A stretch of DNA of 63,703 bases, the filler included, from Octopus bimaculoides (taxonomy: Eukaryota), in NCBI RefSeq assembly GCF_001194135.2. It is 7 parts of 6 records of this genome, joined end to end, with 100 filler letters (N's around TTAATTAATTAA, not from the genome) between each part and the next. Parts side by side here need not be neighbours in the genome. Positions count along the whole stretch, not along the records: positions 60,855 to 63,703 come from NC_068983.1; 6 more parts are not named here. One strand, 5' to 3'. Position numbers and translations under genes: made by a program. Numbering within the stretch: position 1 is the stretch's first letter; every line of letters begins with the position of its first letter. Shown piece after piece: positions 61,154 through 62,735 of this stretch. Below the pieces are notes generated by a model. That model did not search any database and had not been told where the DNA came from. It saw nothing but the letters and a program-made list of their open reading frames with translations.

Positions 61154-61264
61154 ACGTACGACAGTATCGTCCAATATAACCACGACGGCATTTACAGGTG
61201 AATCTACGTCCCCTTCTGATACATGCGCCACCGTTTTTGCAAGGTCTTTTAGAGCATGGATTGA
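61154..61264 (-). CDS. Internal exon encoding a cationic EGF-like domain (third)
   Basis: It has a ttcttttatacacAAG acceptor and GTAAGT donor, 111 nt. It translates to [36 protein letters not shown]. Confidence 0.8.
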
Positions 61265-61813
61265 CTTGTGTATAAAAGAAATAAAAATTGTATTTCACAA
61301 TCTTATATATATTTACAATGAAATAATGGAGGAATTCCATTTTACAAATTTCCTATCTACTCTTTTTAATTAGTTTCTCTAAAACAAAAATGTGTTCTTC
61401 GGGTTTCAAAAAAATTCGTAAATTTTCAAAATCTTTTTCTGTAGCAAAAGCGTCACTCTTTGATTTTAAGTGCCTACTGCAAAAACAAATTCACAAAAAA
61501 ATCTATCTAGAAGCTGGGAGCGGAGATTAATAAATTTTCAAATCATTTTCGACTGAAAATCTCCCCTAATTCATCATTTACAAGGGTGTAAGGAAAAAGA
61601 ACTAAAGGGTCCCCGTCGCATTTGAGAAAATCCAACCTCTTTGGGTGTACTATTCTAAAAGTCTGCCAATTAACACTATCGTGAATATTACACGGCAACG
61701 ACAGGATACTCAGCTAATGCATGCATGTGTGTATATATATATATGTATATTCATTGCTCCTTTAATACATTTCTAAAAAAAGATCTTAGGATCATTTTTT
61801 GTGTTATACTTAC

Positions 61814-61924
61814 ACGTACGACAATATCGTCCAATATAACCTCGTCGGCATTTACAGGTGAATCTACGTCCCCTTCTGATACATGCACCACTGTTTTTGC
61901 AAGGTCGCTTATAGCATGGATTGA
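61814..61924 (-). CDS. Internal exon encoding a cationic EGF-like domain (second)
   Basis: It has a ttcttttatacacAAG acceptor and GTAAGT donor, 111 nt. It translates to [36 protein letters not shown]. Confidence 0.8.
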
Positions 61925-62624
61925 CTTGTGTATAAAAGAAATAAAATGGTATTTCACAATCTTATATGTATTTACAATGAAATAATGAAAGAATTCCATT
62001 TTAGAAATTTCTTGTTTTCTGCTTTGAATTAGTTCCTTTAAAAATAAATGTGTTATTGGGGTTTCAAAAAAATTGGTAAATTTTCAAAATCTTTTTCTGT
62101 AGGAAAATCGTCACTCTTTGATTTTAAGTGCATCCAGCAGAAAAGAAAAATTGACAAAGAAATCTGTCCGGAAGCTGGCAGCAGAGATTAATAAATTTTC
62201 AAAACATTTTCGACGAAAAAGCTCCCCTAATCATCATTTGCAAGGGTGTAAGGAAAAAGAACTAAAAGGTCCCCGTCGCATTTGAGAAAATCCAACCTCT
62301 TTGGGTGTACTATTCTAAAAGTCAGCCAATTCACACTATTGTGAATATTACACGGCAACGACGGGATACTCAGTTAATGCATGTATGTGTATATATACAA
62401 GTATATTTGAGTGAGAGTGGGAGACGGAGGGAGGAGTTTCATTATATGGAATAGCATGGAAAGTTTCTACCAAGATATTTCCATTAACCAAGCCATTCAA
62501 CCAATCACCTTTCTTAATATGTATTCATGAGGTACCTACCTTGGCTCTTTAAATATACTTGTAAAACAAAATCTATGATAAATCTATGCTTATAAATTAT
62601 GACTATTTTTAATGTTATACTTAC

Positions 62625-62735
62625 ATCTATTACAGTATCTTCCAGAGTAACCAGGTCTGCATTTACAGGTGAATCTATGTCCTTTCCTGATACATGTGCC
62701 GCCGTTCTTACATGGTCTCCTATGGCATGGATTGA
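62625..62735 (-). CDS. Internal exon encoding a cationic EGF-like domain (first of three in transcript order)
   Basis: It has a ttttacgcacTAG acceptor and GTAAGT donor, 111 nt, phase 1-1. It translates to [36 protein letters not shown], with six Cys in EGF spacing. Confidence 0.85.

What the first reader, a model, noticed from the sequence alone, without database searches (positions are those of the whole stretch)
61154..62735. Array of one-exon-per-domain, highly cationic EGF repeats resembling mussel adhesive protein mfp-2
Seen: three 111-nt phase 1-1 exons with intact GT/AG sites splice in frame to [110 protein letters not shown]. The last domain has 12 Arg/Lys in 37 residues, and none of the three has Asp or Glu. 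They lack the acidic calcium-binding EGF consensus of Notch/fibrillin types. Known: mussel foot protein-2 is a tandem array of basic EGF repeats with NPC..xPCKN.G.C and C.C..GY.GR.C motifs. Inferred: this may be part of an uncharacterised secreted structural, adhesive or antimicrobial cephalopod protein (for example egg cement or capsule, mucus, gland secretion), with Arg replacing Lys. The start and end of the gene are not in this segment.
Basis: partly seen in the sequence, partly recalled or inferred. Interest (0 to 1): 0.8.

Follow-up and report, generated by a model that had tools for sequence, protein, structure and literature searches.

The report
Arg-rich EGF exon array, octopus
Three intact exons in the Octopus bimaculoides genome each encode one unusually positively charged EGF module; they belong to a fast-duplicating exon array beside a gene for a large secreted matrix- or mucus-type protein, and they are not a mussel-glue (mfp-2) homologue.

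Summary
Three 111-nt phase 1-1 exons on the minus strand (62735-62625, 61924-61814, 61264-61154) have AG acceptors and GTAAGT donors.

I placed the piece at Octopus bimaculoides CM046603.1, about 46.1685-46.1714 Mb. It lies on the same strand as, and about 10 kb past the annotated end of, a gene misnamed "neurogenic locus notch homolog protein 1".

That gene encodes signal peptide - 5 cationic EGF - VWA - 12 EGF modules (mostly cationic) - VWA - 4 ordinary EGF - VWD - TIL. Its O. sinensis and O. vulgaris orthologues end in two PAN domains, and matching PAN exons lie unannotated in the O. bimaculoides locus. About 16 of its EGF modules use the same 111-nt exon design. Exon A is 97% identical to one of them. 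Exons B and C are a distinct, more cationic subtype.

Exons B and C differ mostly at synonymous sites (pN/pS 0.10), so they have been maintained as coding sequence.

The mfp-2 motif resemblance is the generic Notch/Delta-type EGF consensus. The extreme charge is real: core net charge is +9 to +11, against a mean of -0.95 in 4454 other EGF domains.

The most likely role is a polycationic, polyanion-binding stalk of a secreted matrix, mucus or adhesive-type protein. Expression and the gene's limits remain untested.

The parts
62625..62735 (-). Exon A: 111 nt, phase 1-1, one EGF module [36 protein letters not shown] (core net charge +9)
   Evidence: AG acceptor and GTAAGT donor. It is 97.3% identical to exon Obi_48002 of the neighbouring gene and 95.5% identical to the O. 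vulgaris exon Ovu_23109.
61814..61924 (-). Exon B: 111 nt, phase 1-1, EGF module [36 protein letters not shown] (core net charge +11). An alternative donor would end the exon at 61820.
   Evidence: The peptide through Cys6 is identical to the first module of P0001.
61154..61264 (-). Exon C: 111 nt, phase 1-1, EGF module [36 protein letters not shown] (core net charge +11). An alternative donor would end the exon at 61160.
   Evidence: It is 92.8% identical to exon B. Six of the 8 differences are synonymous.
61925..62624 (-). Intron between A and B (700 nt). Its 3' 480 nt are 90% identical to the next intron, and it holds a ~150-nt segment that the next intron lacks.
61265..61813 (-). Intron between B and C (549 nt). 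Together with exon B it forms the 660-nt tandem genomic unit.
60855..61153 (-). Start of the intron after exon C, cut by the piece's edge. Positions 60855-61088 are 99% identical to 62287-62520 in the A-B intron. This gives a 1432-nt higher-order repeat and implies that at least one more B-like exon follows.
   Evidence: P0001 joins a B-identical module to a fourth module type that is not in the window.
62736..63703 (-). Sequence 5' of exon A, either intron or intergenic. It holds no EGF exon and no recognisable signal-peptide exon. (CA)n and (CTGT)n microsatellites lie at 63230-63626. Positions 62942-63703 match CM046603.1 at 100%, directly after a 4.9-kb assembly gap.

Best explanation
These are three consecutive members of a longer, tandemly duplicated array of 111-nt phase-1 exons in Octopus bimaculoides (CM046603.1, about 46,168,548-46,171,396, minus strand). 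Each exon encodes one disulfide-locked, non-calcium-binding, Arg-rich EGF module.

The array belongs to an octopod gene family of large secreted proteins. Their layout is signal peptide, one or two blocks of cationic EGF modules, VWA domains with an intact MIDAS motif, ordinary EGF modules, VWD, TIL and PAN. Annotation pipelines mislabel them 'Notch homolog-like'.

The window's exons lie on the same strand just downstream of one such gene. Most likely they are the cationic EGF stalk of a tandem paralogue, or a still unannotated part of that locus.

Inferred mechanism: the array forms a stiff, polycationic rod with about +10 charge per 37 residues. This rod binds polyanionic partners electrostatically, for example sulfated glycans, acidic mucins or charged surfaces. 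The VWA, VWD/TIL and PAN domains would provide metal-dependent ligand binding and multimerisation. Together these would give cohesion to a secreted matrix, mucus or adhesive-type secretion. Repeat number and charge change quickly through unequal crossing-over between the 660-nt and 1432-nt genomic units.

Shown: exon structure, EGF identity, charge, genomic location, family architecture and purifying selection.
Inferred: transcription of these particular exons, their linkage to VWA/VWD exons, polyanion binding, and the tissue of expression.
For: Exons, splice sites and peptide.

EGF identity: Pfam; best solved relatives are DLL1 and Notch EGFs. The AF2 model of the sister fragment P0001 (pLDDT 75) matches Notch EGF11-13 with probability 1.0.

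Location: window 62942-63703 equals L001 100577-99816 at 100%. L001 is CM046603.1:46170635-46271211 reversed and carries the P0157 gene on the same strand.

Family architecture: P0015, P0157, P0140 and P0156 carry a signal peptide (MKTLCFLTLIVIAVVLTRTSG), EGF, VWA, VWD, TIL and PAN. Both VWA domains have the DxSxS MIDAS motif.

Exon design: 33 exons compared. The ~16 cationic EGF exons of L001 and the 14 of O. vulgaris L002 share the 111-nt (a few 114-nt) phase-1 design, AG|TNAATCCATGC...T|GTRAGT. Exon A is 97% identical to one of them.

Selection: pN/pS is 0.10 for B against C. Two nonsynonymous differences are seen where 8.4 are expected from the 10% intron divergence (Poisson P=0.01). Six of 8 differences are synonymous (binomial P=0.003).

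Charge: core net charge is +9, +11 and +11. Among 4454 EGF cores from 261 other proteins the mean is -0.95, SD 2.3 and maximum +9.

Precedent for cationic, cysteine-rich cohesive proteins with VWD/TIL/EGF domains: flatworm Mlig-ap1, whose attachment is blocked by heparin (PMC6410801). Limpet mucus proteins carry vWFD and EGF domains (PMC7333891). Mussel mfp-2 has 11 EGF repeats and pI 9.5 (PMC9999432).
Against: There is no transcript evidence for these exons. No gene is on record over them in the annotation I could read. The only model touching this subtype is a 71-aa fragment from 2015.

The exons lie about 26 kb past the last credible exon of the neighbouring gene. No signal-peptide exon was found between.

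A decayed EGF exon that has lost Cys3 and Cys6 lies about 5.7 kb upstream on the same strand.

The region is full of assembly gaps, so order and completeness are uncertain. No counterpart was seen in the 10-kb 3' flank of the O. vulgaris orthologue.

Polyanion binding and tissue of expression are pure inference.
Confidence: 0.55

Rival explanations
1. The array is a non-functional duplicated fragment: a young pseudogene or untranscribed remnant. It would have been copied from the neighbouring gene's EGF exon array by segmental duplication or unequal crossing-over, and is still intact only because it is young.
For: It lies outside any gene on record and about 26 kb downstream of the last credible exon. 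A degenerate EGF exon, VNPCYKTCKNGGVYISEGYNFTCKCQPDNNGRYRRW, sits upstream at L001 ~94049-94159. No signal-peptide exon was detected. Exon A differs from its 97%-identical source exon by 2 nonsynonymous changes and 1 synonymous change, which looks neutral but is too few to judge.
Against: All 18 cysteines, all three acceptors and all three donors are intact. Exons B and C have diverged 7% from each other, and their introns 10%. Yet only 2 of about 83 nonsynonymous sites changed (pN/pS 0.10, P about 0.003-0.01). B and C form a distinct subtype only ~80% identical to any exon of the neighbouring gene, so they are not a recent copy of it. An independent annotation did call two sister exons as coding.
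Confidence: 0.25
2. One reading: a stand-alone, EGF-only, polycationic secreted protein functionally analogous to mussel mfp-2. It would be an adhesive, egg cement or capsule protein, with Tyr-to-DOPA chemistry.
For: The peptide has pI 10.8, 6.4 mol% Tyr and 16% Cys in tandem EGF modules. mfp-2 is 11 EGF repeats with pI 9.5 and 5 mol% DOPA (PMC9999432). PVFP-5 is a detectable hit at E=9e-10. Unmodified Pvfp-5beta coacervates (PMC9314366). The gene's ends are unknown, so an EGF-only product is not excluded.
Against: All full-length relatives found embed such arrays in VWA/VWD/TIL/PAN proteins. The motif similarity is generic, since DLL1 and Notch score far better than PVFP-5. The modules are Arg-dominated, whereas the Lys-DOPA pairing stressed for mussel proteins is not evident here (PMC6709630). 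No signal-peptide exon was seen nearby. There are no data on DOPA or tissue.
Confidence: 0.1
3. A Notch-pathway receptor or ligand fragment, as the database names of its relatives suggest, or a cationic cysteine-rich antimicrobial product.
For: Source names include 'neurogenic locus notch homolog protein 1/2-like'. The best solved-structure hits are DLL1 and Notch1 EGFs. High positive charge combined with disulfides is typical of many antimicrobial peptides (general knowledge).
Against: Pfam finds no DSL/MNNL, LNR, NOD or ankyrin domains in P0015, P0140 or P0020. Instead it finds VWA, VWD and PAN, with TIL confirmed in a P0140 segment. The names come from automatic EGF-level similarity, a pitfall also noted in PMC13608469. 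Nothing shows that single modules are released as peptides: I saw no obvious dibasic-processing layout beyond the general Arg richness, and antimicrobial activity was not tested.
Confidence: 0.05

Closest known systems
Octopod secreted EGF-VWA-VWD-TIL-PAN proteins: O. bimaculoides P0157 ('neurogenic locus notch homolog protein 1') and XP_014776970.1, O. vulgaris CAI9719088.1, O. sinensis LOC115209189, Argonauta hians GAB1606482.1
   Same: They share the 111-nt phase-1 exon design, with the same acceptor and donor context. Their modules are also free of Asp and Glu and rich in Arg. Exon A is 97% identical to one exon of P0157's gene. The window is physically adjacent to that gene on the same strand.
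   Different: Exons B and C form their own subtype, about 72% identical in protein and ~80% in nucleotides to the nearest family exon. They are more cationic: 12 K+R per module against 6-11. Continuity with VWA and VWD exons is not shown. The family itself is functionally uncharacterised.
Mussel foot protein 2 (mfp-2/Mgfp-2) and Perna viridis Pvfp-5beta
   Same: Both are tandem EGF modules with a basic pI and several mol% Tyr, in secreted material-forming proteins (PMC9999432, PMC9314366). PVFP-5 is a detectable sequence hit at E=9e-10.
   Different: Similarity is at the level of the generic EGF consensus, and DLL1 and Notch score far higher. mfp-2 is essentially EGF-only, whereas the relatives here are multidomain. 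Arg dominates here rather than Lys. The lineage is a cephalopod without a byssus. DOPA status is unknown. The mfp-2 sequence itself could not be compared with these tools.
Notch/Delta-type non-calcium-binding EGF repeats (Pfam EGF PF00008 / hEGF PF12661)
   Same: They share the C-x4-C-x5-C-x8-C-x-C-x8-C spacing, the fold, and the classic one-module-per-exon, phase 1-1 organisation.
   Different: Core net charge is +9 to +11, against a mean of -0.95 (SD 2.3, maximum +9) in 4454 other EGF cores. There is no DSL, LNR or ANK context in the relatives.
Flatworm cohesive adhesive protein Mlig-ap1 (and sea-star Sfp1, limpet mucus proteins)
   Same: These are large, secreted, cysteine-rich proteins. 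They combine strongly cationic Lys/Arg regions with VWD/C8/TIL and EGF modules. Charge-based cohesion has been shown experimentally: heparin blocks attachment (PMC6410801). Limpet proteins carry vWFD and EGF domains (PMC7333891).
   Different: In Mlig-ap1 the charge lies in unstructured KR-rich regions and its EGFs are calcium-binding. Here the charge is carried by the EGF modules themselves. No homology beyond shared domain types has been shown.
Haliotis rufescens LOC124110407 (XP_048237149.1)
   Same: It has 8 VWA domains plus 34 Pfam EGF matches to almost identical, Asp/Glu-free, Arg-rich modules. Array pI is 11.9 and K+R is 39%. This is an independent molluscan example of a polycationic EGF array joined to VWA domains.
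   Different: Its module has different loop lengths and no Tyr. It has no VWD or PAN domain. It is uncharacterised, and its relationship could be convergence or distant homology.

Membership tests
EGF-like domain (Pfam PF00008 / hEGF) | Six cysteines with C-x4-C-x5-C-x8-C-x-C-x8-C spacing, and a profile score above the curated cutoff | tested here: met
   80.4 bits against a cutoff of 21.5, with three stretches. The spacing can be read directly from the sequence.
EGF-like domain (Pfam PF00008 / hEGF) | Two-hairpin EGF fold | tested here: met
   Tested on the AF2 model of the sister fragment P0001 (module 1 is identical to exon B through Cys6). pLDDT is 75. Foldseek gives probability 1.0 to Notch1 EGF11-13, and single modules fit at rmsd ~2.1-2.3 A.
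Calcium-binding EGF (EGF_CA PF07645) | Acidic D/N-x-D/N-E/Q consensus before Cys1 and an Asp/Asn hydroxylation motif | tested here: not met
   EGF_CA scores 16.6 bits against a cutoff of 27. There is no Asp or Glu anywhere in the 110 residues.
Mussel foot protein 2 (mfp-2) | Specific sequence relationship: closer to mfp-2 or mussel-foot EGF proteins than to generic EGF proteins | tested here: not met
   DLL1 scores E=2e-56 and Notch1 1.5e-29, against 9e-10 for PVFP-5. Whole-sequence scores add up over repeated modules, so multi-EGF chains such as DLL1 are favoured.
Mussel foot protein 2 (mfp-2) | Protein consisting essentially of about 11 tandem EGF repeats only | not testable with these tools
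   The gene's ends lie outside the piece. All full-length relatives found are multidomain proteins with VWA, VWD, TIL and PAN.
Mussel foot protein 2 (mfp-2) | Basic pI (~9.5) and Tyr converted to DOPA (~5 mol%) | tested here: inconclusive
   The pI of 10.8 and Tyr content of 6.4 mol% are compatible (PMC9999432). DOPA modification cannot be tested in silico.
Notch receptors / DSL ligands | DSL/MNNL, or LNR, NOD and ankyrin domains, plus a transmembrane segment | tested here: not met
   No such Pfam families appear in P0015, P0140 or P0020. For the window's own gene this is not testable.
Octopod EGF-VWA-VWD-TIL-PAN secreted protein family | 111-nt phase 1-1 exon per EGF module, with AG|TNAATCCATGC ... 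T|GTRAGT context and an Asp/Glu-free cationic module | tested here: met
   The 33-exon comparison, supported.
Octopod EGF-VWA-VWD-TIL-PAN secreted protein family | Genomic linkage to the family locus | tested here: met
   A 100% match places the piece on the same strand, about 10.2 kb past the annotated end of the P0157 gene.
Octopod EGF-VWA-VWD-TIL-PAN secreted protein family | The same transcript carries signal peptide, VWA and VWD exons | not testable with these tools
   DNA beyond 60855 could not be fetched and there are no transcript data. No gene model on record covers the exons.

The most novel reading that the evidence does not exclude
Octopuses have evolved, within a lineage-specific secreted VWA/VWD/PAN protein family, an EGF module re-purposed as a folded polycation of about +10 per 37 residues. 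Its copy number changes rapidly by exon-array duplication. The B/C-type array in this window would be the charge-carrying cohesive element of a cephalopod glue, mucus or egg-capsule material. That would be a convergent counterpart of mussel mfp-2 and flatworm Mlig-ap1, with the charge built into the EGF fold itself.
Probability: 0.15. Interest if true: 0.65.

Novelty: new member of a known kind. Interest (0 to 1): 0.35.

Why it matters
If these exons are expressed, they mark an uncharacterised, octopod-restricted family of secreted proteins in which a classic signalling and matrix module (EGF) has become a rigid polycation. That would give biomaterials and bioadhesion researchers a candidate cephalopod cohesive protein.

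It would also offer a clean example of rapid exon-array evolution by unequal crossing-over.

There is a practical point as well. Current octopus annotations of this family are wrong in several ways: the 'Notch' names, N-termini translated in the wrong frame, and missing exons. Proteomic and transcriptomic studies would therefore miss or mislabel these proteins. Their Lys/Arg richness also makes tryptic detection poor, as was reported for Mlig-ap1 (PMC6410801).

Tried and rejected

(2) A word-indexed search with the spliced peptide returned only P0001 and an unrelated 190-aa EGF fragment. It missed P0157 even though they share 12-16-mers, so absence of hits from that tool is weak evidence.

(3) A word-indexed search with the frame-0 peptide, meant to catch mis-framed gene models over the window, gave no hits.

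(4) Exact look-ups of P0001, of the 91-aa read-through ORF and of O. sinensis P0156 were not on record. I therefore could not obtain DNA downstream of 60855 or the O. sinensis locus.

(5) Scans of metagenome and prokaryote-genome contigs with an exon pattern and an intron pattern gave 0 matches.

(6) Rfam gave only sub-threshold microsatellite artefacts.

(7) Literature searches for the peptide strings and for the relatives' accessions found 0 papers. Searches on cephalopod EGF and adhesion found nothing about this family.

(8) I looked for a signal-peptide or first exon homologous to that of P0157 between the neighbouring gene and the window. Only dispersed-repeat matches came up.

(9) The frame-0 (acidic) reading as a real or dual coding frame is rejected. 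Its pN/pS is about 0.8-2.3, against 0.10-0.33 for the EGF frame.

(10) I did not count a C8 domain in the relatives, because there is no Pfam hit for it. TIL is confirmed at 29 bits.
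Full report
**1. Observation**

On the minus strand, three 111-nt segments lie at 62735-62625, 61924-61814 and 61264-61154. Each is preceded by a pyrimidine-rich tract and AG, and each is followed by GTAAGTATAAC.

The peptide has 18 of 18 cysteines in the spacing C-x4-C-x5-C-x8-C-x-C-x8-C. It has 10, 12 and 12 Lys+Arg per module and no Asp or Glu. Its pI is 10.8 and it is 6.4 mol% Tyr.

Pfam EGF scores 80.4 bits (E=1.1e-22). 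The calcium-binding model stays below its cutoff. No other EGF-pattern reading frame exists in the piece apart from microsatellite artefacts.

One nuance: exons B and C also contain a GT six bases upstream (C|GTACGT). An older gene-model fragment uses that donor.

**2. The genomic unit**

Exon plus intron is itself a tandem repeat. The B and C units are 660 bp apart, with introns about 90% identical. Positions 60855-61088, after exon C, are 99% identical to 62287-62520, after exon A. This gives a 1432-bp higher-order period.

The array therefore almost certainly continues past the edge of the piece with another B-like exon. That fits P0001 (UniParc UPI0006956255, 71 aa). Its first module equals exon B through Cys6, and its second module ([36 protein letters not shown]) is not in the window.

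**3. Coding constraint**

In the EGF frame, pN/pS is 0.10 (B against C), 0.24 (A against B) and 0.33 (A against C). A second frame, frame 0, is also open but gives 0.8-2.3.

B and C differ at 8 positions, of which 6 are synonymous (binomial P=0.003). With 10.1% divergence in the adjacent introns, 8.4 nonsynonymous differences would be expected, and only 2 are seen (Poisson P=0.01). So these exons have been kept as EGF-coding sequence after they duplicated.

**4. Where the piece comes from**

A HMMER scan of 1.8 billion representative proteins with P0001 returned mostly giant Notch-, SNED1- or fibropellin-like proteins at 35-40% identity. A few hits were closer.

The closer hits are O. bimaculoides XP_014776970.1 (P0015, 54%), O. 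vulgaris CAI9719088.1 (P0140) and Argonauta hians GAB1606482.1 (P0020). A follow-up search added O. bimaculoides P0157 (1545 aa) and O. sinensis LOC115209189 (P0156).

I fetched the P0157 locus as L001, which is CM046603.1:46170635-46271211 reversed. Window 62942-63703 matches L001 100577-99816 at 100% over 762 nt.

The piece is therefore O. bimaculoides chromosome sequence, with window position p corresponding to p + 46,107,693. It is on the same strand as the P0157 gene. Exon A starts about 10.2 kb beyond the annotated gene end.

The true 3' end of that gene is probably earlier. The PAN-domain exons seen in O. sinensis map to L001 70002-70238 and 74619-74840. P0157's own last exon (90482-90574) has no counterpart in the orthologues. 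The piece begins directly after a 4.9-kb run of N.

**5. The family**

P0157 reads, in order:
- signal peptide
- 5 cationic EGF modules
- VWA
- 12 EGF modules, mostly cationic
- VWA
- 4 ordinary EGF modules
- VWD
- a TIL-type Cys-rich region

The O. sinensis and O. vulgaris orthologues add an EGF module and two PAN domains. Both VWA domains keep the DxSxS MIDAS motif.

The cationic arrays have pI 10.1, 21-22% Lys+Arg and essentially no acidic residues. The distal EGFs have pI 8.0. None of these proteins has a DSL, LNR or ankyrin domain. Their 'Notch homolog' names are artefacts of EGF-level similarity.

In L001, about 16 cationic EGF modules are each encoded by one exon of the same design, as are 14 in O. 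vulgaris L002.

Exon A is 97.3% identical to the L001 exon at 48002 and 95.5% identical to its O. vulgaris orthologue. Exons B and C are only about 80% identical to any of them, and they are the most cationic exons in the set.

A decayed EGF exon that has lost Cys3 and Cys6 lies at L001 ~94049-94159, between the gene and the window.

**6. How unusual is the charge?**

I extracted 4454 EGF cores (Cys1 to Cys6) from 261 other EGF-rich proteins retrieved here. Their mean net charge is -0.95 (SD 2.3) and the maximum is +9.

The window's cores are +9, +11 and +11. The charge is therefore a genuine outlier, although this reference set is a convenience sample.

Comparable arrays do exist. Haliotis rufescens LOC124110407 has 8 VWA domains plus 34 Arg-rich EGF matches, with array pI 11.9. 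A Xenia soft-coral protein has 7 Lys/Tyr-rich EGFs.

**7. The mfp-2 comparison**

The review literature describes mfp-2 as 45 kDa, 11 EGF repeats, pI 9.5 and 5 mol% DOPA (PMC9999432).

The peptide matches DLL1 at E=2e-56 and Notch1 at 1.5e-29. It matches the only solved mussel-foot EGF protein, PVFP-5, at 9e-10. These whole-sequence scores add up over repeated modules, which favours multi-EGF chains. Pvfp-5beta is itself reported as 47-50% identical to DLL1 (PMC9314366, PMC6709630).

A recent review warns that EGF-level similarity cannot establish Mfp-2 identity (PMC13608469). So the resemblance is compositional: basic, Tyr-containing tandem EGFs. It is not a family relationship, and the relatives here are multidomain proteins. 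I could not align mfp-2 directly.

**8. Most likely function**

Three things are shown: the relatives are secreted, they have a multimerisation and ligand-binding domain set (VWA-MIDAS, VWD, TIL, PAN), and the EGF modules are folded, polycationic and under purifying selection.

From this I infer that the array acts as a stiff polycationic stalk that binds polyanions such as sulfated glycans, acidic mucins or charged surfaces. It would contribute cohesion to a secreted matrix, mucus or adhesive-type material.

Experimental precedent for charge-based cohesion in a VWD/TIL/EGF protein comes from flatworm Mlig-ap1 (PMC6410801). Limpet mucus and scallop byssus proteins also carry vWFD and EGF domains (PMC7333891, PMC9168380).

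Confidence is 0.55. The rivals are a non-functional duplicate (0.25), a stand-alone mfp-2-like protein (0.10), and Notch signalling or an antimicrobial role (0.05).

**9. Limits**

I had no transcript data. DNA beyond 60855 could not be fetched, and the locus is heavily gapped. Several look-ups failed, as listed under Tried and rejected.

**10. Verdict**

This is a real, correctly read set of EGF exons. The cephalopod origin and the exceptional charge are confirmed. The mfp-2 homology is not supported.

The exons are a new, apparently unannotated member of a database-known but uncharacterised octopod family of secreted EGF-VWA-VWD-PAN proteins. Interest is moderate to low (0.35).

Noticed in passing
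window 61154-62735 (all three exons); L001 and L002 exons: A second reading frame (frame 0, giving an acidic peptide such as SIHAIGDHVRTAAHVSGKDIDSPVNADLVTLEDTVID) is free of stops in all three window exons. It is open in 29 of the 33 homologous exons examined, while the third frame always has stops. It shows no coding constraint (pN/pS about 1).
   Followed up: yes
L002 10001-23204 (O. vulgaris OX597816.1), protein P0140 residues 1-250; also P0156 residues 1-~225: The annotated N-termini of O. vulgaris CAI9719088.1 and O. sinensis LOC115209189 isoform X2 are frame-0 mistranslations of EGF exons. The O. vulgaris model starts at an ATG inside an EGF exon. I verified the O. vulgaris case residue for residue against the DNA. 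The O. sinensis case rests on homology only, because its locus could not be fetched.
   Followed up: yes
L002 2469-9123: At least six further intact cationic EGF exons ([37 protein letters not shown]) lie upstream of the annotated start of the O. vulgaris gene. A seventh, at 9979, contains that start codon. The real array therefore has at least 14 modules, and the true 5' end with its signal peptide is missing from the model.
   Followed up: partly
L001 70002-70238, 74619-74840 and 90482-90574: The PAN-domain exons of the octopus orthologues map to unannotated positions in the O. bimaculoides locus. The annotated last exon of P0157, 16 kb further on, has no counterpart in the orthologues and looks spurious.
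   Followed up: partly
L001 ~94049-94159: A degenerate EGF exon lies on the same strand between the gene and the window. It has lost Cys3 and Cys6, carries a two-codon deletion, and has GY changed to DN. It still ends in T|GTAAGTATAAC.
   Followed up: partly
window 62460-63150 vs L001 47972-48270 and 48873-49506: Exon A is a mosaic. The exon and its 3' flank are 96% identical to one exon unit of the neighbouring gene. Its 5' flank matches the unit of the next exon at 87%. This suggests unequal crossing-over or gene conversion. A 22-nt motif, ATTCTATCGTTATATCCATATA, recurs at 62806-62785 and 61107-61086 and may mark a duplication junction.
   Followed up: partly
window 63230-63312 and 63436-63626: (GT/CA)n and (AGAC/CTGT)n microsatellites lie 5' of exon A. 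They generate spurious Cys-rich ORFs and sub-threshold Rfam miRNA hits.
   Followed up: yes
P0062 (Haliotis rufescens XP_048237149.1), residues 1416-2809: Pfam finds 34 EGF matches to almost identical Arg-rich modules (GRCHKRRCRNGGTCKQIGPLKWKCLCRRGFRGRRCRRKVGV). Array pI is 11.9 and K+R is 39%, with no Tyr. Seven VWA domains precede the array and one follows. The protein is uncharacterised and is another polycationic EGF array in a mollusc.
   Followed up: partly
window 62625-62735 (exon A) vs exons B, C: Exon A alone carries the O-fucose consensus (C2-x4-T-C3, CKNGGTC) and the EOGT O-GlcNAc consensus (C5-xxGx[S/T]Gxx-C6, [10 protein letters not shown]). Exons B and C have lost both (Ala and Ile at these positions). 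The consensus motifs are from general knowledge and were not tested.
   Followed up: no
P0049 (Xenia sp. XP_046863735.1): This soft-coral protein has 7 Lys/Tyr-rich, Asp/Glu-free EGF modules (pI 9.6, 7.8% Tyr). They sit between two Trp/Cys-rich regions that Pfam does not recognise. In composition it is closer to mussel foot proteins than the octopus array is.
   Followed up: no
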